Assembly: GCA_044892525.1 (NCBI GenBank)
Contig: CM097886.1
Location: forward strand, 60,078,001 to 60,142,000
Length of the DNA stretch: 64,000 nt
Direction of reading: 5' to 3'
From: Schmidtea polychroa
Lineage: Eukaryota
Shown: positions 43,319-59,798 of the stretch, in pieces
Position numbering within the stretch: position 1 is the first letter of the stretch
Layout: the number at the start of each line of letters is the position of its first letter
The notes under the pieces: model-generated
What the model was told of the DNA's origin: nothing
Databases searched by the model: none
Seen by the model: the letters and a program-made list of their open reading frames with translations, nothing else
Made by a program: the position numbers and the translations under genes

Positions 43319-44673
43319 CTATATTTGAAAAACTCGTCCAGTTTTGTCCTCTGACACAGTGACAACGCAGCCATCATTTTTTGTTACGAACATATCCCAA
43401 ACGATTCCCGAATGTCCCCACCAAGTCGGCACGTCTCCACTGGGATTAATTCGCCCATCCCAACAACACAATCTTCCATCGAGTCCAGACGTATAAAACA
43501 CTGGCTTACCACGACTCCACTTTAATTGTGAAACTGTTGATTGCTCTTCATATTCATTTTCAGTTTTACTATCTTGCAGAGCCGTCGGAACTGTTGACTT
43601 ATAATTCCACATGTACCGGATTCGATTGTGCGATAAATCATACACCCCAATTATTCCATTTTTACTGGCAAACGCAAGATATTGCAGTACGTCTGAAAAT
43701 GCAACATTTGTCACTAAGCCACCATCTTTAATTGCAATTCGATTCAATTTACAGTTAACATTCTGACCACCATATACTGCACAAGCTAGAATAATTTGAC
43801 TCCAATCCCCAATAGCAATCATTTCCGAGTTATTTAATTTATGAGTGGCAAACCCGGCTCCAAGCCCTTCGTCATTATCTTCCTCTTCATTTGCAATCGA
43901 ATTTAAATCAATTTTAATCATGTTATAAGTATTAACATCACATAAATTTAATTCATTTCTGTTGCTGCATTCTTCATGAGATTGCTCACAACTCCCACCA
44001 TAAAGTACAGCAGAATTATTCCCATTCAGAATGACATTGAATCCATTGCAGCAACAACCTTTGCCTTGATTGTAAAAAGTAGACACCATTTCTTGTGAAT
44101 TTTCATCGGATAAATTACTAATTGAAAATGACTGGACAGTTCCAGTTTTATCACAAACATATAAAAATTCATCTTTGGATAATGGATCAATTATCCACTT
44201 AAAGTCAATAATTTCTGAAACTTCAATTGATTTGAATTTATTAAACTTCATTTGATCAAAATTTAATTTCCATACGATTACACAACCAAATAAATCCCCA
44301 CTTACAAGGAATGAGTTAGTTTCGTTGATGCTTAATTTCGTTATTGATTCTGAATGTCCATATAATGTATCAATTTGTTTGCCATCTTCTAAACTCCAGG
44401 CAATTATAGCATCATCCATTCCACCAGTGAATGCAACTCTTGATTTATTGTCACAAACTACTGACAAAACAACATTCGAATGACCACTCAAAACAAATTT
44501 TGCATCATCTTTTAATGGAATAATTTCTTCAAATTCGTCCTCATCTGAAAAATAATTTATAAAAACAATTATTATTAACATGCATAATACATACCAAGAT
44601 CTGTTTCACATTCTTCAATTACTTCTTCATATTCACTATCACTTGCATTTTCAAACTCCATACAATTTTCCAT
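43319..44673 (-). CDS. AAMP: WD40-repeat protein, AAMP/Sqt1-like (434 aa, 2 exons)
   Basis: Exon 1 at 44673-44595 (acidic MENCMEFENASDSEYEEVIEECETDL), a 50-nt intron at 44594-44545, exon 2 to 43319. The acidic N-terminus, GHSNVVLSV..AFTGGMDD..AW, GHSES..LVSGDLFG..VW and the terminal SEDKTGRVF match the AAMP/Sqt1 layout. Confidence 0.75.
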
Positions 44674-46619: not shown

Positions 46620-49537
46620 CTTATAATATATATGTTGGGGTTAGTGCAAAAACAAAAAATATAATATATAAAAGGAAAGCATAACAAATATTGGTAAAAT
46701 CAATAAAAGTGCAAAATTAATTCAAACTTACTAAAAATCAAAATTCAATATTGAACGGGGGTATCGGATATGGTTGAACCAGAAATTGATAGATGAGTTC
46801 AGAAATTATAATGAAAATTTAATAAGATGTTCACACGGTAAGTTAATGTGGAAAAACAAATTAATTAAAATTAATTAATCTGTAATGGAAAACCCGGGCC
46901 AATGGGAAGCCCGAGCCCATGGGAAACCCGAGCGCTGAAGGAAACCCGATGCACAGTGAGACCCGATAGATCAGATAAGAGAGGGAGTATTTCCAGCGCC
47001 AATCTAGGGTAAACAAATTAAAACAATTTGGAAACCCTCAAGTATTTACCTAGGATTCCCGGGAAATAATTACTTAATTAAAATTCTGTAGATGATTGCT
47101 TTCTCAGAAACAGTATAAGGAGAGAGCTCAGAAACAGATAATCCTACGGGTTAAATTTATCGGTTACTCGACTGAGCTGAACAATTTTACATACACACAC
47201 GCACGTATGTTTCATTTACAATACATTAACATTAACAAAATCTATAAACAAGAAAGAAACACTGTTAGAAAGAACAAAAGATGGCATTAATTTTGGTGCA
47301 TTCATAGATTCCTTTCGTCAGCATACCCTTGTCGTCACTATTCTTACAATCAAATTATTTCAACACATTCATTAACTTTTTGTAATCCAATTTTAATTTT
47401 CAGATGAATTTTCATTTTATCGTTTGTTTTTCCGGTTGACAAATTGTATTTGATCTATTAAATTAGAGCTGGAGAAAGGTAAAGACAAAAGAATCACAGA
47501 AAAAGCTAAGAGGTAATGTTATCATTTCAATTTCGGTTGCAACTCTTACAGGGGTCTCATATAAAATCAAGTTGCAATGTTCATGATATGAAAATTCAAA
47601 AGTTAATTTTGCTAAAATAGTTTGTAATTACATAAATGATAAACCGTCGTACTAATCTTGTTTTATTCAGTTTGACATGATATTTCATCGTCTAAAAATG
47701 GGTTTTCCGTTTGCAATATAGTCTGGTTTATATATGCAAGTCTCTAGATCTAAGATAATTGGTTAAAGATTTATTTGATTTAATCAAATACTTAGAAAAG
47801 ACTCGTAGTTTACCTTTATGATCCGCTTGGTTACTTTGCGGAGGAAGTAACCAATACTATCAGTCATGTATATTACGAGCTATGTTAATTTTGAACAAAA
47901 TTGATATTTTTAAATCATCACATCATTTTATCTTAAAATTTAGGTGCTTATCACATTAACTGTTAATTGCAAACAATGAACACAATATTTGATTTACTTT
48001 TAATAAAATAATAACATTTTGTTTATATTTTAAATATTTTACCCAAAATAAGACCCCCATAATATGAACAAAAAATGTCACTAATATAAAAAAAATGATT
48101 TGGTCAGAAAAAAGAACTTGCTGAAAAGATGAAAAAAGAGATGGTTAAAAACCAGAGACTTCTGGAACAGAAGCACAGTGTTTCACTTGGATTAGTCAAT
48201 AAGCCTTCGAATATGGAATTTGAGAAAGAAGTTCCCGAGAATCTTCTAATTAGATGAAATTAACAGATCAAATGGAGGCAAACTGAAGATTCAGAGCCAG
48301 TTTTATTTATCAGGTTTAATGAATCTAGAAGCAGAAATATAAGTGTTTGAAAAGCTTGAAAAGTATTTCTTACAGCATCTACCTGAAGATATTAGCCATC
48401 TATTGAAGGTAAAAGACGAATTGGTAAAATAAAAAATCAATAGGCATCCAATAATCATTGGCTGGTTAATTCATAAAAGGAAAGATTAAATTTATGTCAT
48501 AAGATAAATGTCGTAATATTCACATTTTAGTATTTTATAACAAATCCATTTCGCATGTTCACAGTACACGGAATTATGAACACTCAAAAATCCGGTCCCC
48601 TCACGTTCTCATTGAACAGGACTTACTGTATGAATATTATTAGACAAAGATGCTTTCATTTCATTACTGTTAAAATGTTTTTAGGCCTTGCTCAAATTTA
48701 TGAAAATTTTCACAGCAGGTATGGCATGCTCGGAAACAAATCTCCTAGTGATGTTACCAACAACCTTTTGGAAAAGACTATGTATCATAATAATTTCAAG
48801 TAACAGTTAGCTCAACCTCTTATTCGTCTCATCTTTTACGTATACACCAACCATTTATCCACTGACTTCTCCACTAATTCATCTGAAATAAAGAGAGATT
48901 TAGATTTCATCTATATTGAAATAAAAGAAGAGGATAGAGGTGATTTTTGTATTTAGTTTTAAATAAAAATTGAGGTTAAGCTACATTGGCCTGGCCTTAG
49001 TATTATTTTTTATTATATTTTTACATCAAAAAATGCAGTTTTCTTGACAAAATTGTGTTAAAAAAGCCTCTCTAATGCTAATAATAACAAATTTTTTATA
49101 TCTTTTCGAATTTAAAAACTCTTGCTTCACATGGTCATTAAATTATCTGTGGCAACTCTTCTTCGAGTATTCTTCTATAAAAAGTTCACAAAAAACAAAT
49201 TATTGAAGGAACCTAAACAAAAAAAAATTACTTTTGTAAACACTTGCCCTTTACCTGATAATTCGACCCCCACTCATTAACTTAGTTATTGGTTAACTTT
49301 TTGTGATTTGTGTACAAATAAGGAATTCGTAATCATTCATAACCTTTCAGGTAACCAAGTCCGAATATTTGTTTATTTCATAATCAATTCCACTAAATAA
49401 ACAATTTCACAGGTGCCGTATAAATCCCGCCTTTGAAAGCAACCAAGACAACGGAAAAAGAAAACTAATAAGCCACATGCTGCAGATATATTCATTCATA
49501 AATATCATTCGAAATGTATTTCAAACATAAGAATTAA

Positions 49538-51235
49538 ATGATGAAAATTGCATTATTAGTCTCTTTAATTTTTGGACTTCTAGAAGCTTCTACAGTAAAC
49601 AAGCCATCGACATGTACCTTTCCATTTCATTACAAGGGTGCTACTTACAATGAATGCATAAAGTTCGACTCTCAATACTACTGGTGCTCGGCTTATGAAA
49701 TTTACAATGGAACTTTTTCCTATTGCCAAGAGGACAAAACCGATCAAATAACAGATCAGCATTTCTATGATTTGATAAAAAGATCCCAAGAAGCCGTTTC
49801 CAGACTTGACAAGCTACAGCAAAACTTGAATAACAAAGTAATAAACTAGAACTAATTTACTTCAAACCAATATTCATTCTAGAATGGTCAATGCTCTCAA
49901 TGCATTGAAATTATGAAGACGATTTCGACGACAATTACTGATCAATCTGCAATCTATATGGATCAAAATAAACGTCTGCTAGGTCTTCGAGAACAACATG
50001 CAAAGCTTGAAAATGTTGTTGATCAAATTAAACAGTAAATTTAATTTAATCACACCAATTAATTTTCATTATTTATTGAATAGACATTATCAAAGGAGAC
50101 GCTGTAAGCAAAGTCCAGATGGAATTGAATATATTGGTAGAGTTTCAATGACAGCTTCCGGGTTCCAGTGCCAAAACTGGACATCTCAATTTCCACACAA
50201 ACATGAATACGTGGAATCCAATAGATATCCCGATAACGACATTGCATTAACCCGAAACTTTTGCAGAAATCCAAGTGGAGATGTCGGACCATGGTGTTAC
50301 ATTANNNNNNNNNNNNNNNNNNNNNNNNNNNNNNNNNNNNNNNNNNNNNNNNNNNNNNNNNNNNNNNNNNNNNNNNNNNNNNNNNNNNNNNNNNNNNNNN
50401 NNNNNNNNNNNNNNNNNNNNNNNNNNNNNNNNNNNNNNNNNNNNNNNNNNNNNNNNNNNNNNNNNNNNNNNNNNNNNNNNNNNNNNNNNNNNNNNNNNNN
50501 NNNNNNNNNNNNNNNNNNNNNNNNNNNNNNNNNNNNNNNNNNNNNNNNNNNNNNNNNNNNNNNNNNNNNNNNNNNNNNNNNNNNNNNNNNNNNNNNNNNN
50601 NNNNNNNNNNNNAAATAAATTATTCATTAATATTTAGGCTCAAAAATCATGGGAACACTGCGTGATACCGGAATGTGATATAGACTGTAGAATAAATGAA
50701 AAAGGTTATAGTTTATTTATTTGTATATTTTAAAAATTTACAGAACAATCTGATCTTCCATTATGTGACTCTTATCCTTCGTATCAGTGCCCCACTGGAT
50801 CTTTATTTTTCAATGTAATCTTTATATTTTCATATATTCTGGTGATAAATAATGCCAATTTAGAACTACTGTTATCAAAAACATGAAACTCCATTAACAT
50901 ATGTAGAAGCGGAAAACAAATGTGTTAAAGATGGGGGACATTTAGTATCTATTCAATCGCAATCCGAAAATATATTTGTCGCAAAAACGGTTTATCCTGG
51001 AGCAGATGCTTTCTATATAGGAATGAATGACGTTACAACAGAAGGTGCTTACGTCTGGACGGATCTATCACCATTAAAATACATGAAATTCTATGCGGGA
51101 GAACCAAATAATTATGCAAACGAAGACTGCGTGCAAATGGGACGATACCCAGCACAGAGAGAAGCTTGGAATGACATCTCATGCGAATCTAAAACTGGAT
51201 TTGTTTGTAAATTTAAACCGATTCCGTTAGAATAA
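49538..51235 (+). CDS. Secreted mosaic lectin: signal peptide - FN2 - coiled coil - kringle - C-type lectin (EPN/WND)
   Basis: Exons 49538-49837, 49883-50034, 50084-(gap 50305), 50638-50704, 50744-50814 and 50864-51235, with visible introns of 39-49 nt. FN2 CTFPFHYKGATYNEC..WCS; kringle YIG..TASGFQCQNW..NFCRNPSGDVGPWCY..WEHCVIPEC; CTLD CPTG..YCY..HLVSI..FYIG..GEPNN..EDC..WNDISC..FVC. Confidence 0.92.
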
Positions 51236-51852
51236 AATTTCAACTATTTTTCTTCTAATAATAAAGATCTCAAACTCATTTTGATTGTTTATAAAAGTCC
51301 CTGAAAAATTGTTATAAGAATTCATTTATATTCATCATCAAATTCCTAATTTGTTAAGAAATAAAAATGAGGATAAAATTGCAGAATGAAGGTTTAATTT
51401 AGATCAAACTTGCCAATAAAATTTATGCTGAATTTTGAAGAGGAAATTTTTATTGTTGAAATACTTTTTAAACAAAATTTACAAAAATTAGTTGATTAGA
51501 ACGGGTTTTTAAATTTTCAATATTTTTTTTTGAGGGGGGAGAGATAAATATATTGATATTCCCCTATTAAAGCTATACTTTAAGTACAGCTCACCCTAGG
51601 TATGTTCTGTATTTTTATAAAGATTTTGTAATAATTTGGGCAAATGCAATACATGACTTTTAAATATTTTTAGAGAAAATTGTCAGATTACCTAATTTTT
51701 TTTAATTGTTTTTTATCTAACATCTGTTTCCCTTGCAATATACCAATTTTTGATTTGAACAATCTTTTTATTAATTTTTAAATTTTTGTCTTTTTTGACA
51801 ATTTGCACTCAATTCTCAGTGTATTTTAATTTCTTTATACGTTACTCTAGAT

Positions 51853-54228
51853 CAACGGTTCTCAAACTTTTTGAACCGCGGAGCCCTCCAAAGCCATATA
51901 GATTTCCACGGAACCCCATTGGTTCACTAATTATGTGTATGCCACTCGATGATCTAACATCGAAGAGTATATATATTTTTATATATATATTTATAAATAA
52001 AAAAAGATTTAAATTTTTTGTACTTCAATTGAATCATTTATTTATCGGAAAATAATTACAAAATATTACAAAAAACAAACATTGCTAGTGGGACGGATGG
52101 ACTTGTTTCCTTTTTTGACATAATTGTTTTATGTCTGGCTTTATAGAGGACAGTTGAATCCTCATATCAGCTTCTGCATCGAGTCTATTGCGATATTTTG
52201 TTTTTGTTGCAGCATACGAAGAAAATCCAGATTCGCACAGATAAGTTGTAGCGAAAGGAAGAAGTATTTTAACAGCTTGAATTGATAAATCTGCATATTC
52301 TTCTCTCAAAGTACACCAAAATTCTGGCAAAGATAGTTTTTCAAATAGGAGCTGCAGTGAGGAATCTGATATCATGTCAATGAAAATTTCGTACTCCTTA
52401 GCTGTGAATTTTTCTGGCCTTTTCTGCACTATGAATGGGGTTCTAATCCATGTATAACTTTTAAGCTTTTCATTCTCTTCATTTGGAAAATATTGTTTGA
52501 CCGAGTTTAGAATTTCTTCCAAATGTTGACAAATTTCATCACACAACATAATAAGGTCACTTGCATCAATGTCTCCTTTAATTTCATCGCAGAAATCCTT
52601 AAGTATTGTGAAGCTATCTAGTTCACGAGAGCGAATGCAAGAGATCCATAATTCCAATTTCTTTTTAAAAGCTTGAATCTTATCATTGGCTGTGAACACT
52701 GTTACTTGTTTTCCTTGAAGTGACATATTCACTTTATTTATCTTTGAAAAAATATCGGCGAGATATCCAAGTCGAAACAACCATAGTTTATCTGTCAATC
52801 TTTCTTGTAAGTCCATCCTGTTGTTCATGAAAAAGGAGCCCAATTCGGAACGTAGCTCGAATAGTCGAACAAGTACTTTCCCTCGAGACAGCCATCGTAC
52901 TTCGGTATGGAGCAGTAAAGCTTTATGAAGGCTGCCCATATCTTCGCATAGAATCTTGAAAAGCCGAGTTTGTAATGGTCGCGATTTTATGAAATTTATA
53001 ATCTTTACAGACTCGTCAAGGACCTTTTTAAGTCCCAATGGCATTTTTTTTACAGCAAGTGCTTGGCGATGAAGAATACAGTGGCTATTTGTGCAGTTTG
53101 GTGCTAAGTTCTTGATTTTTGCGACAGCGCCAGCAGTTTTTCCTACCATTGCCTTTGCACCATCAGTGCAGATATCAACACAGTTTTTCCAATCTAAGTT
53201 ATGAGTATTAAAAAAGTTATCCACCATTTTAAATATTTCGGCACCAGTTGTATCGGTTGGCAATGGTTGACACAAAAGTAGATCCTCTTCAAGCAAATTT
53301 AGATGCTGATATCGGACAAATACAAGCAAGACTGCAAGTCCAGCTACGTCTGTGCTTTCGTCCATTTGCAGAGAAAAATTACAACATTGCAGACGAGATA
53401 TCAATTCAGCCCTTACATTGGCTGCTAAATCTTTAATTCGACGAGCTACCGTGTCATTGGATAGTGGCACATTAGTGATTTCTTTTGCCGACGTTTCATC
53501 AAGTATACATTTAGCGATATCGACTGCACAAGGCTTGATCAATGTCTCAGCTATTGTATGAGCTTCGCCTGCCAATGCAATACGATAACTGACAATATAT
53601 GATGCTTCAGTGGCCTTCTCATTGCTAGTTTTAAATGTTGAAACAATTAGGCTTTGGCGCTTTAAGAGTTCATCACGCATACGCATAAAATAATCAACTT
53701 TCTTATGTTTAAACTCTGGATGTACGGTTTCCAAATGGCGACGCATTTTAGCGGGTACCATAGCACTATTTGGAAAAAGCTTGCTGCATAAGACACATTG
53801 AGGCACATTGTTAGCATCTACAAAACCAAGAGACAGGTAGCTTTCATCATATTTCCTTTTCTTAGTGGCTGGTTCACGTAATATGCTCGTAGTGGCAGCA
53901 GATACTTCTTTTTCTGGATTTATGCAAGTTTCCACTGTTGTTTCATTTTCAATGTTTTTGGATGTAGACGGTCCAGCTGATTGCTGCGATCCTGTATCTT
54001 TCGATGTACCTTTGATAAGCCAACGATCCATACTTAATAAGTTGCAGATAAAAAAAATAATAATTAAAACTCGCTTAATAATGTATATATAAGTAATTTA
54101 TAGAAATAAATAAATTAATATGTAAATTAATAATAATTTTTAGCGATTTTAAATTTATAATTCACGGAGCCCTTTGAGGTACCTCGCGGAACCCCAGGGC
54201 TCCGCGGAGCACACTTTGAGAACCGCTG
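51853..54228 (-). mobile_element. Complete Buster-type hAT transposon (2376 bp)
   Basis: TIRs CAACGGTTCTCAAACT / ACTTTGAGAACCGCTG. Perfect 8-bp TSD CTCTAGAT (51845-51852 and 54229-54236) with the central TA typical of Buster. Confidence 0.97.
52085..54031 (-). CDS. Intact Buster/Charlie hAT transposase, 648 aa
   Basis: BED finger (PQCVLC..MRRHLETVH), MDESTD, CTDGAKAM, HCILHRQAL, LLHTEVRWLSRG and PFATTYLCESGFS. No stops. Confidence 0.97.
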   Translation of the reverse strand: MDRWLIKGTSKDTGSQQSAGPSTSKNIENETTVETCINPEKEVSAATTSILREPATKKRKYDESYLSLGFVDANNVPQCVLCSKLFPNSAMVPAKMRRHLETVHPEFKHKKVDYFMRMRDELLKRQSLIVSTFKTSNEKATEASYIVSYRIALAGEAHTIAETLIKPCAVDIAKCILDETSAKEITNVPLSNDTVARRIKDLAANVRAELISRLQCCNFSLQMDESTDVAGLAVLLVFVRYQHLNLLEEDLLLCQPLPTDTTGAEIFKMVDNFFNTHNLDWKNCVDICTDGAKAMVGKTAGAVAKIKNLAPNCTNSHCILHRQALAVKKMPLGLKKVLDESVKIINFIKSRPLQTRLFKILCEDMGSLHKALLLHTEVRWLSRGKVLVRLFELRSELGSFFMNNRMDLQERLTDKLWLFRLGYLADIFSKINKVNMSLQGKQVTVFTANDKIQAFKKKLELWISCIRSRELDSFTILKDFCDEIKGDIDASDLIMLCDEICQHLEEILNSVKQYFPNEENEKLKSYTWIRTPFIVQKRPEKFTAKEYEIFIDMISDSSLQLLFEKLSLPEFWCTLREEYADLSIQAVKILLPFATTYLCESGFSSYAATKTKYRNRLDAEADMRIQLSSIKPDIKQLCQKRKQVHPSH

Positions 54229-58576: not shown

Positions 58577-59798
58577 TTAATCAATTGATATCTCCGTTGA
58601 CGGGGAGCTACTTTTATCACTGGAATGGAAATATTTCGTAATATTTGTATTCAATTCCGAGATTGCATCATTAATATATGGCTCAATTTTTATAAAGTCA
58701 TTTACTTTGTTGATCCCGTTTTGATTACGGATTAAGGATTTATTATCAAAGGCTGGATGGTATCCCCTAGAGTCCATGAGAGTTTCGCGTAAACATGTTT
58801 CGGGATGAATTTGATAGCTAGAGTCAACAAAAGGATCTTTGTTTTGCACCAAAGGTATATTAGACTTGATAGTGTCTAAATCAGTAATTGCACTGTTGAT
58901 ATAATTATTGCTTTTTTTATTATTTTTATTATTATTAATATTATTATTATTAGCATTTGATCTCTTTCGTTTTCTAGTTGGATCTTTACTGTGGATCCTG
59001 GTGTGCCGTGTCCGCTCATCGGACCGAGAGAAACATTTGAAACAGATCTCACAAGAATAAGGCTTCTCTCCGGTATGTGTTCTAATATGGGTTCGTCGAT
59101 GATCCGACCGGATGAAAGTTTTATCACAATATGGACAAGTGAGAGTTTTAATACCGGTATGAATTTTTTCGTGCCGTCTCAATTCATCTTTTCTGGTAAA
59201 TCGACTGGGACAATCTGAACATGAAAAGGATCTTTCAGCTGGGAGTTTATTAGATTTTTCCTCTCTCGTAATTGAACTGATTGGAGCTTGTGACTGTTCA
59301 AGTTTTATATTTGTTTGATTAACAATTTGAGGATTGTCATGAAAAATGGGTTTCAATTTTGAACTGTCATAAATTGAATAATTATTCATGTTCTGGAAAT
59401 TATTGTTGGAAAACCGGTATATATATTGTTGGTATGGATGAACATATTGGAACTGGGAATCAGGAATTAGATCAGTAGAAATAAATGGGTCATTTTGTAA
59501 GATTTGAAGTAAACCATTGGGATGGTCTGAATTCAATTGATGAAGGAGACTATAATTACCATTCATATTATTGCTGGGATACTGATAACCTCCACCATTA
59601 AATTCCACGTTTTGAATGAATCCACAGTGCTCATTGTGTGCTAAAAAATGTGATAATTAAAACAATTCTACCGTTAATTCTACTTGGAATGTTTAAAAGA
59701 TTTTCAAATTGTTTCGAATTAATATCAAACGATGAAATATGACCAGAATTATGGACATAGCCAATTGTATCATCATTAGAACCTTCGTCTAAAATCAT
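58577..59798 (-). CDS. EGR: EGR-family triple C2H2 zinc-finger transcription factor (392 aa, 2 exons)
   Basis: Exon 1 at 59798-59684, a 43-nt intron at 59683-59641, exon 2 at 59640-58577. Recognition helices RKDELRRH, RSDHRRTH and RSDERTRH versus canonical EGR RSDELTRH, RSDHLTTH and RSDERKRH. Confidence 0.85.

What the first reader, a model, noticed from the sequence alone, without database searches (positions are those of the whole stretch)
49538..51235. Secreted FN2 - coiled coil - kringle - EPN C-type lectin: an unusual domain architecture
Seen: manual splicing gives a signal peptide, one FN2 domain, a ~90-aa helical linker, a kringle and a long-form CTLD with EPN and WND. Known: EPN/WND marks Ca-dependent mannose/glucose-type binding. 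FN2+CTLD occurs in mannose receptors, FN2+kringle in factor XII/HGFA, and coiled-coil necks trimerise collectins and tetranectin. I do not recall all four in one small soluble protein without a protease domain. Inference: an oligomeric pattern-recognition or matrix/plasminogen-interacting lectin built by exon shuffling.
Basis: partly seen in the sequence, partly recalled or inferred. Interest (0 to 1): 0.7.

Follow-up and report, generated by a model that had tools for sequence, protein, structure and literature searches.

The report
Secreted FN2–coiled-coil–kringle–C-type lectin gene
This is a real, transcribed six-exon gene of a planarian-type flatworm that encodes a small secreted lectin. 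The protein combines a collagen-binding-type FN2 module, a self-associating helical stalk, a kringle and a mannose-type sugar-binding domain, an arrangement I did not find described, although each part and the general principle are well known.

Summary
Window 49538-51235 (+) holds one six-exon gene for a 397-residue secreted protein. Its parts, in order:
- a signal peptide
- FN2 (Pfam E 3.8e-8)
- a proline-free helical stalk of about 94 residues with a central CxxC
- a kringle (E 3.6e-19)
- a long-form C-type lectin domain (E 7.8e-22) with EPN, the following Glu, and WND intact

RNA-type contigs from four runs (two studies) join all six exons at GT..AG borders. They bridge the assembly gap with 11 extra letters, which keeps the frame (673+11=684). 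The "two genes" rival is therefore essentially refuted.

Three copies of the exon-2 stalk piece are modelled as a parallel, in-register coiled coil (score 0.59, best control 0.01).

The same genome has two more predicted genes with the same N-terminal cassette (signal peptide, FN2, helix, CxxC, helix). One has a CTLD head only; the other has a small Cys-rich head. The stalk therefore looks like a reusable oligomerisation cassette.

FN2, kringle and CTLD do co-occur elsewhere, but only in giant multi-CTLD "mannose-receptor-like" invertebrate proteins. I found no small collectin-like version. My database search was limited because the spliced protein could not be submitted whole.

Verdict: a new variant of the soluble oligomeric C-type lectin theme, of moderate interest. 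The scan has noted other kringle mosaics elsewhere in this genome.

The parts
49538..49837 (+). Exon 1. ATG; signal peptide (residues 1-18, 49538-49591); FN2 domain (Cys26-Cys63, 49613-49726); first helical stalk segment (residues 67-100).
   Evidence: In-frame stop directly upstream. Pfam fn2 E 3.8e-8. Nearest solved FN2 is PDC-109. RNA contig of run X2 starts at 49536 and joins 49837 to 49883.
49883..50034 (+). Exon 2. CxxC (Cys104 and Cys107, 49892-49903) and the second helical stalk segment; the preceding intron is phase 0 and the following one phase 2.
   Evidence: GT..AG joints 49837/49883 and 50034/50084 in three runs. Heptad pattern. Three copies modelled as a parallel in-register coiled coil: ipSAE 0.59, best control 0.01.
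50084..50304 (+). Exon 3. End of the stalk (basic QRRR) and the first roughly 67 residues of the kringle (Cys158 onward); the exon continues into the assembly gap.
   Evidence: Pfam Kringle E 3.6e-19, profile positions 5-64 of 79. Nearest solved kringles are plasminogen K2 and K4.
50305..50612 (.). Assembly gap (N, length only estimated). It holds the last 11 letters of exon 3 and the 5' part of intron 3. Letters not reproduced.
   Evidence: Contigs of four runs have 11 letters between 50304 and 50638, and the frame is kept. The other introns are 39-49 bases, so the true gap is probably much shorter than 308 (inference).
50638..50704 (+). Exon 4. End of the kringle (Trp-Glu-x-Cys ... Cys241) and start of the Cys-containing linker.
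   Evidence: A stop codon lies just upstream in frame, with an AG acceptor at 50636-50637. Joint to 50638 in four runs.
50744..50814 (+). Exon 5. Linker and start of the long-form CTLD (first extra cysteine, Cys266).
   Evidence: Joints 50704/50744 and 50814/50864 with GT..AG.
50864..51235 (+). Exon 6. [quoted passage not shown]
   Evidence: Pfam Lectin_C E 7.8e-22, profile positions 2-107 of 107. PDB matches include collectin-11, langerin and mincle at about 60 bits. Single copy in the genome.
51231..51278 (+). 3' end. Two AATAAA signals (51231, 51260) and two poly(A) addition sites (51248, 51278).
   Evidence: Poly(A) loose ends in run X5 (table 7). Signals located.

Best explanation
One expressed gene of a planarian-type flatworm encodes a 397-residue secreted mosaic lectin. 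Its order is: signal peptide, one FN2 domain, a two-segment alpha-helical stalk broken by a CxxC, one kringle, a short disulphide-containing linker, and one long-form C-type lectin domain with a complete mannose/GlcNAc/fucose-type Ca2+ site.

Shown:
- the gene structure
- transcription as a single spliced mRNA, including across the gap
- the four modules
- intact sugar-site residues

Supported by modelling: the stalk self-associates as a parallel in-register coiled coil. A trimer was modelled; the actual number of chains was not determined.

Inferred:
- The CxxC cysteines lock the oligomer covalently.
- The oligomer presents several weak-affinity sugar-binding heads for high-avidity, Ca2+-dependent binding of repetitive glycans.
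- FN2 (collagen/gelatin-type ligands) and the kringle (protein ligands) tether the complex to matrix, mucus or cell surfaces.

Functionally it would be a collectin-like soluble agglutinin or cross-linker in which an FN2 module replaces the collagen tail. It belongs to a small lineage-specific family that reuses the signal-FN2-helix-CxxC-helix cassette with different C-terminal heads.
For: - Pfam hits for the three globular modules, with matching solved relatives.
- Spliced contigs from four runs in two studies carry all six exons in one open frame, with canonical borders and poly(A) tails.
- The product has 20 cysteines in the expected patterns, no transmembrane segment and no Gly-X-Y repeats.
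- EPN, the Glu of the following Asn-Glu-Asp, and WND are all present.
- A 146-residue database fragment (P0081) is 80% identical and keeps all of these residues. This points to a conserved orthologue in another organism.
- Coiled-coil model: ipSAE 0.59/0.42/0.59, best of 3 controls 0.01, partner pLDDT at least 79, runs agree on at least 95% of contacts, contacts at a/d heptad spacing. In the tool's calibration the mark was reached by 21 of 30 proteins solved as pairs of one chain and by 0 of 23 solved as single chains. That calibration used two copies, and the tool notes the counts hold only roughly for three.
- Two paralogue models share the collinear cassette with the CxxC at the same place, and their FN2 domains are confirmed by Pfam.
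Against: - No binding, oligomer state or expression site was measured.
- My crude heptad score beats shuffles only modestly (17/500 and 37/500 shuffles reach it for the two segments).
- The complex test is a model's own confidence, and coiled coils may score from memory.
- Unlike collectins and tetranectin, the stalk is not adjacent to the sugar-binding domain. A kringle and a 24-residue linker intervene, so fixed trimeric head geometry is not expected.
- The kringle lacks part of the canonical lysine-binding centre.
- The two paralogues are my own models, with no RNA check.
- Four residues of the kringle lie in the gap.
Confidence: 0.7

Rival explanations
1. The protein is mainly a structural or adhesive secretion component (mucus, adhesive-gland or basement-membrane cross-linker), not an immune recognition molecule. 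The CTLD would bind the animal's own glycoproteins, and FN2 and the kringle would bind collagen or lysine-rich secreted proteins.
For: - Flatworm adhesive secretions use C-type lectin and kringle proteins. A six-kringle protein is required for adhesion and is proposed to bind a lysine-rich cohesive protein (PMC9229212).
- Planarian C-type lectin-like genes are expressed in mucus glands and at the body edge (PMC7958881).
- FN2 is a collagen/gelatin-binding module (named family knowledge; PMC3435950).
Against: - There is no expression-site data for this gene.
- EPN-type sites with a coiled-coil stalk are the classic design of humoral pattern-recognition lectins.
- The two roles are not mutually exclusive.
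Confidence: 0.3
2. The CTLD acts as a protein-binding domain rather than a sugar-binding one, as in tetranectin, whose CTLD binds a plasminogen kringle. Kringle and CTLD of neighbouring molecules would then bind each other, giving self-assembly or auto-inhibition.
For: - A coiled coil plus a long-form CTLD is the tetranectin design, and tetranectin's CTLD binds kringle 4 (established knowledge, recalled, not tested here).
- Kringle and CTLD are adjacent in this protein.
Against: - All five Ca2+-site-2 ligands of sugar-binding CTLDs are kept, and are also kept in the 80%-identical fragment P0081.
- No test of a kringle-CTLD contact was possible, because the spliced pieces could not be submitted together.
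Confidence: 0.1
3. The locus is really two genes (an FN2-helix gene and a kringle-CTLD gene), or the two sides of the gap were wrongly joined by the assembler.
For: - An assembly gap of unknown true length lies inside the model at 50305-50612.
- Contigs can in principle be chimeric, as the tool itself cautions.
Against: - Records of 1115-1209 letters from three runs in two studies carry all exons, with the same joints and one open frame. A fourth run bridges the gap with the same 11 letters.
- The kringle is split by the gap, and its two halves fit one Pfam profile and one six-Cys pattern.
- The exon-2/exon-3 joint links stalk and kringle in frame.
Confidence: 0.03

Closest known systems
Collectins (mannan-binding lectin, surfactant protein D, collectin-11)
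   Same: Secreted, with an alpha-helical coiled-coil stalk and an EPN/WND Ca2+-dependent CTLD. Collectin-11 is among the best single-domain PDB matches (62 bits). Avidity through oligomerisation.
   Different: No collagen-like Gly-X-Y region; an FN2 module sits at the N-terminus instead. The stalk is separated from the CTLD by a kringle and a linker. The CTLD is long-form, with the extra N-terminal disulphide. CxxC lies in the middle of the stalk.
Tetranectin group (CLEC3B: coiled coil plus long-form CTLD)
   Same: Small soluble protein made of a coiled coil plus a single long-form CTLD; functional link to kringles (recalled knowledge).
   Different: Here the kringle is part of the same chain and an FN2 is added. 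The sugar-type EPN site is intact. Sequence similarity is no higher than to other CTLDs.
Mannose receptor family (MRC1, MRC2/Endo180, PLA2R1, LY75) and invertebrate 'mannose-receptor-like' giants
   Same: FN2 lies N-terminal to the CTLD(s). These are the top whole-protein PDB and database matches. Invertebrate members also carry kringles: Owenia, Anneissia, Diadema, Tubulanus, Mytilus. One tunicate protein (Styela clava XP_039270230, P0028) has fn2, Kringle and 12 Lectin_C domains.
   Different: Those proteins are 1100-3300 residues long with 5-16 CTLDs. The vertebrate family members additionally carry a ricin-type head and a transmembrane anchor. This protein has 397 residues, one CTLD, a coiled coil and no membrane anchor.
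Factor XII / HGF activator (FN2 and kringle in one chain)
   Same: FN2 and kringle occur in one secreted protein.
   Different: No EGF, FN1 or serine protease domain. The reading frame ends after the CTLD.
Described planarian C-type lectin-like proteins (Girardia tigrina SCARF family, Dugesia japonica Dj-CTL)
   Same: Secreted planarian CTLD proteins. Dj-CTL is induced by bacteria and needed for normal wound healing (PMC7958881).
   Different: SCARF proteins are dual-CTLD (PMC514892). In the texts I could read, no FN2, coiled coil or kringle is mentioned for them.

Membership tests
C-type lectin-like domain superfamily (Pfam PF00059) | Full-length match to the CTLD profile above the curated cut-off | tested here: met
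   78.5 bits against a cut-off of 22.6, profile positions 2-107 of 107; 155 PDB CTLD sequences matched at E<=1e-5.
C-type lectin-like domain superfamily (Pfam PF00059) | Four core cysteines (C1-C4), plus the extra N-terminal pair in the long form | tested here: met
   Cys294, 363, 381 and 389, plus Cys266 and 277.
Ca2+-dependent mannose-type CTLDs | Ca2+-site-2 ligands: Glu-Pro-Asn, a downstream Glu, and Trp-Asn-Asp | tested here: met
   EPN at 354-356, Glu in the following Asn-Glu-Asp-Cys, WND at 376-378. Sugar binding itself is not testable with these tools.
Collectins | Collagen-like Gly-X-Y repeat region N-terminal to the neck | tested here: not met
   No run of three or more Gly-X-Y anywhere in the protein.
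Collectins | Coiled-coil neck directly preceding the CTLD | tested here: not met
   A kringle (residues 158-241) and a 24-residue linker lie between the stalk and the CTLD.
Mannose receptor family | Ricin-type head, FN2, 8-10 tandem CTLDs, transmembrane anchor | tested here: not met
   FN2 is present, but there is only one CTLD and no ricin hit. No hydrophobic segment follows the signal peptide.
Kringle domain (Pfam PF00051) | Profile match and six cysteines in the 1-6, 2-4, 3-5 pattern spacing | tested here: met
   69.3 bits against a cut-off of 34.3 on exon 3 alone. Cys158, 180, 211, 222, 236 and 241. Four residues are unread in the gap.
Lysine-binding kringles (plasminogen K1/K4 type) | Anionic pair Asp55/Asp57, a cationic centre (Lys35/Arg71) and aromatic Trp62, Phe/Tyr64, Trp72 | tested here: inconclusive
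   Alignment to plasminogen K4 read with K4 numbering from memory. Asp57, Trp62, Tyr64 and Trp72 are kept. Position 55 is Ser, and positions 35 and 71 are not basic.
Fibronectin type II domain (Pfam PF00040) | Profile match and four cysteines with conserved aromatic residues | tested here: met
   33.6 bits against a cut-off of 22.2, profile positions 1-42 of 42. Cys26, 40, 50 and 63. Best PDB match is PDC-109, E 6.4e-8.
Factor XII / HGFA-type proteases | C-terminal trypsin-like serine protease domain | tested here: not met
   No such Pfam hit; the frame stops at 51233, after the CTLD.

The most novel reading that the evidence does not exclude
The signal-FN2-helix-CxxC-helix unit is a flatworm-specific, disulphide-locked oligomerisation cassette, analogous to the collagen-neck unit of collectins. 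It has been combined by exon shuffling with at least three different recognition heads: kringle plus CTLD, CTLD alone, and a small Cys-rich domain. This would define an undescribed family of humoral recognition or cross-linking proteins in planarians.
Probability: 0.35. Interest if true: 0.6.

Novelty: new variant of a known kind. Interest (0 to 1): 0.45.

Why it matters
Planarians regenerate open wounds in microbe-rich water, yet their humoral recognition molecules are poorly characterised. An abundant, secreted, probably oligomeric mannose-type lectin with matrix-binding modules is a concrete candidate that can be tested by RNAi and with recombinant protein.

For protein evolution, this is a compact natural example of FN2 and kringle in one invertebrate chain. 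FN2 was once thought to be vertebrate-only and derived from kringles. The gene also shows an oligomerisation stalk being reused with different heads, which would be convergent with collectins.

It does not overturn anything known. Every module and the avidity principle are familiar.

Tried and rejected
- **Whole-library search with the CTLD exon.** The best 150 of 22,278 hits were almost all giant multi-CTLD proteins whose summed scores crowd out single-domain relatives. Only P0081, a 146-residue fragment at 80% identity, is orthologue-like.
- **Walking from P0081.** It found only itself. No encoding contig is on record. The libraries here hold almost no planarian proteins.
- **Search with the full-length spliced protein.** It could not be handed to any search or folding tool: there is no reference for spliced sequence, and I did not type it. 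A true architecture search (InterPro/CDART-like) was therefore not done. Absence of a small FN2-coil-kringle-CTLD protein elsewhere is not shown.
- **AlphaFold2 on the CTLD exon without an alignment.** Mean pLDDT was 35.9, which is useless, so no fold search was run.
- **Stalk exon against the own genome.** It matched only itself. The paralogues' stalks are too diverged for sequence search and were found through their FN2 exons instead.
- **Other FN2 loci.** These turned out to be different architectures (CAP/VAL+FN2, triple FN2, FN2 plus VWC-like) and are not members of the cassette family.
- **Best kringle paralogue (43% identity).** It follows a PAN/apple-like pattern, so the kringle here is not a recent local copy.
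- **Heptad scoring against shuffles.** Only weakly significant.
- **Literature searches.** No description of this architecture was found.

Full report
**What is in the sequence**

The window is AT-rich (about 25-37% G+C), and this gene's introns are tiny. Reading 49400-51300 in three frames and placing splice sites gives six exons on the + strand:
- Exon 1: 49538-49837
- Exon 2: 49883-50034
- Exon 3: 50084-50304
- Exon 4: 50638-50704
- Exon 5: 50744-50814
- Exon 6: 50864-51235

A stop codon lies directly upstream of the ATG.

Pfam scans of the single exons give:
- fn2 on exon 1: E 3.8e-8, complete profile
- Kringle on exon 3: E 3.6e-19, profile positions 5-64 of 79
- Lectin_C on exon 6: E 7.8e-22, complete profile

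The remainder of the kringle (Trp-Glu-x-Cys ... Cys) is on exon 4.

The nearest solved relatives are:
- PDC-109 and the gelatinase FN2 modules
- plasminogen kringles 2 and 4
- for single CTLDs: aggrecan, collectin-11, langerin and mincle, at about 60 bits

None is close enough to suggest orthology.

**The gap**

Exon 3 runs into the N stretch 50305-50612. In frame, a stop lies immediately before an AG acceptor at 50636-50637, so exon 4 must start at 50638.

I laid four RNA-type runs (two studies, three samples) on 49300-51500.
- Three runs each have one contig of 1115-1209 letters covering all six exons.
- The joints are 49837/49883, 50034/50084, 50704/50744 and 50814/50864, all GT..AG.
- A joint from 50304 to 50638 carries 11 letters that lie on neither side.
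- A fourth run bridges the gap in the same way.

Exons 1-3 sum to 673 letters. With 11 more the sum is 684, a multiple of three. Exon 4 begins in phase 0, and the four codons concerned contain no stop.

So the two sides of the gap belong to one mRNA and are in frame. The gap hides four residues of the kringle and the 5' part of intron 3. They are not reproduced, and they stand as X in my working translation.

The other introns are 39-49 bases long, so the true gap is probably far shorter than the nominal 308 (inference).

Poly(A) tails start after 51248 and 51278, each about 17 bases downstream of an AATAAA.

All runs differ from the genome at 49718 (Ser61 to Ala) and 50244 (Ala to Thr in the kringle). 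These are most simply strain polymorphisms.

The runs are labelled RNA only by guess. However, spliced contigs with poly(A) tails, holding about 0.45-0.71 of the genomic words, are what RNA gives.

**The protein**

The product has 397 residues, arranged as follows:
- Residues 1-18: a classical signal peptide (MMK, then 12 hydrophobic residues). No later hydrophobic segment exists, so the product is secreted.
- Cys26-Cys63: FN2.
- Residues 64-157: no proline and only two glycines. This region forms two heptad-patterned segments (about 70-100 and 108-157) separated by Asn-Gly-Gln-Cys-Ser-Gln-Cys.
- Cys158-Cys241: a six-cysteine kringle.
- A 24-residue linker with two further cysteines.
- Cys266-Cys389: a long-form CTLD, with the extra N-terminal cysteine pair plus the four core cysteines.

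The CTLD has EPN (354-356), the Glu of the following Asn-Glu-Asp-Cys, and WND (376-378). This is the full set of ligands of the sugar-binding Ca2+ site of mannose/GlcNAc/fucose-type lectins (named family knowledge).

There are 20 cysteines in all. Two N-glycosylation sequons are present (Asn57, Asn182).

The kringle keeps Asp57, Trp62, Tyr64 and Trp72 in plasminogen K4 numbering. It has Ser at position 55 and no basic residue at positions 35 or 71 (numbering from memory). Lysine binding is therefore open.

**Does the stalk oligomerise?**

My simple a/d-position score exceeds shuffles only modestly (17/500 and 37/500 shuffles reach it).

The complex predictor was given three copies of the 50-residue exon-2 piece. 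Results:
- ipSAE of 0.59, 0.42 and 0.59, against a best control of 0.01
- partner pLDDT at least 79
- runs agreeing in at least 95% of contacts
- contacts at 4, 7, 11, 14, 18, 21 ... in register between chains, which means a parallel coiled coil

In the tool's calibration the mark was reached by 21 of 30 proteins solved as pairs of one chain and by 0 of 23 solved as single chains. The tool warns that these counts hold only roughly for three copies, and that such passes can come from memory.

I read this as support for self-association, not as proof, and not as a determination of the number of chains.

**Relatives in the same genome**

The assembly has 781 Mb, with four pieces of 272, 190, 145 and 93 Mb. 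This fits a Schmidtea-like planarian: four chromosome pairs and about 764-774 Mb for S. mediterranea (PMC9177419). Earlier notes of this scan reached the same view. The species was not determined.

- The CTLD exon is single-copy.
- Kringles are numerous; the best paralogue is only 43% identical and follows a PAN-like module.
- At least 28 FN2 matches exist.

Two FN2 loci proved informative.

At C2:36882268-36883521 I could build a seven-exon, 299-residue model: signal peptide, FN2 (Pfam E 1.6e-13), helix, Cys-Glu-Thr-Cys, helix, then a CTLD with EPN and WND (Pfam on the last exon 22.9 bits). It is collinear with the window's protein except that the kringle is absent (blastp E 3e-19).

At C2:188057520-188058332 a five-exon, 213-residue model has the same cassette, with Cys-Gly-Asn-Cys in the stalk. 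It ends in a small Cys-rich head (weak Pfam CC domain, E 1e-3).

The three cassettes align end to end at about 27% identity, with the CxxC in one column. In both paralogues the FN2 exon and both stalk exons are phase 1-1, the signature of shuffled modules. In the window's gene the signal, FN2 and first helix are fused into one exon, and the phases are 0, 2, 0, 1, 0.

Other FN2 genes are of different kinds:
- CAP/VAL plus FN2, as reported for turbellarians (PMC3435950)
- triple FN2
- FN2 plus a VWC-like module

**Is the architecture known elsewhere?**

Among the 150 best CTLD hits in the 1.84-billion-protein library, local scans found kringles in six and FN2 in four. Their source names and Pfam scans show giant "mannose receptor 1-like / lymphocyte antigen 75-like" proteins:
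- an annelid (Owenia)
- a crinoid (Anneissia)
- sea urchins (Diadema)
- a nemertean (Tubulanus)
- mussels (Mytilus)
- a tunicate (Styela clava XP_039270230): 12 Lectin_C, one Kringle, one fn2, plus discoidin, LCCL and trefoil domains

A clam study also lists kringle among the domains of its mannose-receptor-like genes (PMC12321717).

The set of three globular modules is therefore not unprecedented, and kringle-CTLD mixing is widespread in invertebrates. What I did not find is the small, soluble, coiled-coil version.

That negative result is weak. The spliced protein could not be submitted whole. The word-indexed search sees only proteins of similar length to the query. The libraries evidently hold almost no planarian proteins.

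The only close relative is a 146-residue fragment (P0081, a UniParc accession held in the MetaClust source). It is 80% identical over the CTLD and starts at the exon-4/5 junction, with every cysteine, EPN and WND conserved. This suggests a conserved orthologue in another organism.

Seven literature searches found no description of this arrangement. The known planarian C-type lectin-like proteins are the dual-CTLD SCARF family and Dj-CTL.

**Most likely mechanism**

The design (secretion signal, oligomerising helical stalk, EPN-type CTLD) is that of the soluble avidity lectins: collectins and the tetranectin group. Weak monovalent sugar binding is multiplied by oligomerisation.

Here the collagen tail is replaced by an FN2 module, and a kringle sits between stalk and head. 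I therefore expect a flexible, probably disulphide-locked oligomer. It would bind mannose/GlcNAc/fucose-type glycans in a Ca2+-dependent way. Through FN2 and perhaps the kringle, it would attach to collagen-like or other protein ligands.

Whether the glycans are microbial (opsonin or agglutinin) or the animal's own (mucus, adhesive or matrix cross-linker) is undecided. Flatworm adhesion systems do use kringle and C-type lectin proteins (PMC9229212), and Dj-CTL responds to bacteria.

It fails the defining tests for collectins (no Gly-X-Y, stalk not adjacent to the head), for the mannose receptor family (one CTLD, no anchor) and for factor XII-type proteins (no protease). It works like a collectin without being one.

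**Verdict**

I class the gene as a new variant of a known kind. Interest is moderate (0.45). It is raised somewhat by the reusable FN2-stalk cassette, and limited by the ordinariness of each module, the known promiscuity of kringle and CTLD shuffling in invertebrates, and the lack of functional data.

Noticed in passing
G000:C2:36882268-36883521 (+) (loci L029/L034): Predicted seven-exon, 299-residue paralogue: signal peptide, FN2, helix, CxxC, helix, then an EPN/WND CTLD without a kringle. The FN2 and stalk exons are all phase 1-1, and a long (TAT)n repeat sits in the intron after the FN2 exon. This is my own model, with no RNA check.
   Followed up: partly
G000:C2:188057520-188058332 (+) (loci L028/L033): Predicted five-exon, 213-residue gene with the same FN2-helix-CxxC-helix cassette. 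It ends in a small Cys-rich domain (Trp-Phe-Gly-Thr-Ala-Pro ... Cys-Trp-Thr-Gly-Lys), with only a weak Pfam CC-domain hit (E 1e-3). Its identity is unclear.
   Followed up: partly
G000:C2:130313635-130313742 (-) and cluster C4:46045585-46119679 (+): CAP/SCP (venom-allergen-like) genes carrying an FN2 domain, C-terminal in one and N-terminal in a five-gene tandem cluster. These match the FN2-bearing turbellarian VALs that PMC3435950 reported as unusual.
   Followed up: partly
G000:C1:161886380-161886586 (-) (loci L027/L014): The kringle most similar to this gene's kringle (43% identity) follows a PAN/apple-like cysteine pattern, suggesting an HGF/plasminogen-like gene.
   Followed up: no
window 52085-54031 (-): An intact 648-residue ORF that reads like a hAT/Buster-type transposase but gave no Pfam hit at E<=1e-3. 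It lies 850 bases downstream of the lectin gene and is covered by another note of the scan (s1-254568).
   Followed up: partly
window 43319-44581 (-) and 58577-59608 (-): An intronless 420-residue WD40-repeat ORF, and a 343-residue ORF with three C2H2 zinc fingers of EGR-like layout. Both appear intact.
   Followed up: partly
window 49718 and 50244: All RNA-type contigs differ from the genome: T>G (Ser61 to Ala, in FN2) and G>A (Ala to Thr, in the kringle). This is probably a strain difference or an assembly base error.
   Followed up: no
window 50091-50102 (residues 154-157): A basic cluster Gln-Arg-Arg-Arg lies directly before the first kringle cysteine, and Lys-Arg-Arg sits at the equivalent place in the C2:188.05 Mb paralogue. 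This may be a convertase cleavage site that would release the head from the FN2-stalk. Untested.
   Followed up: no
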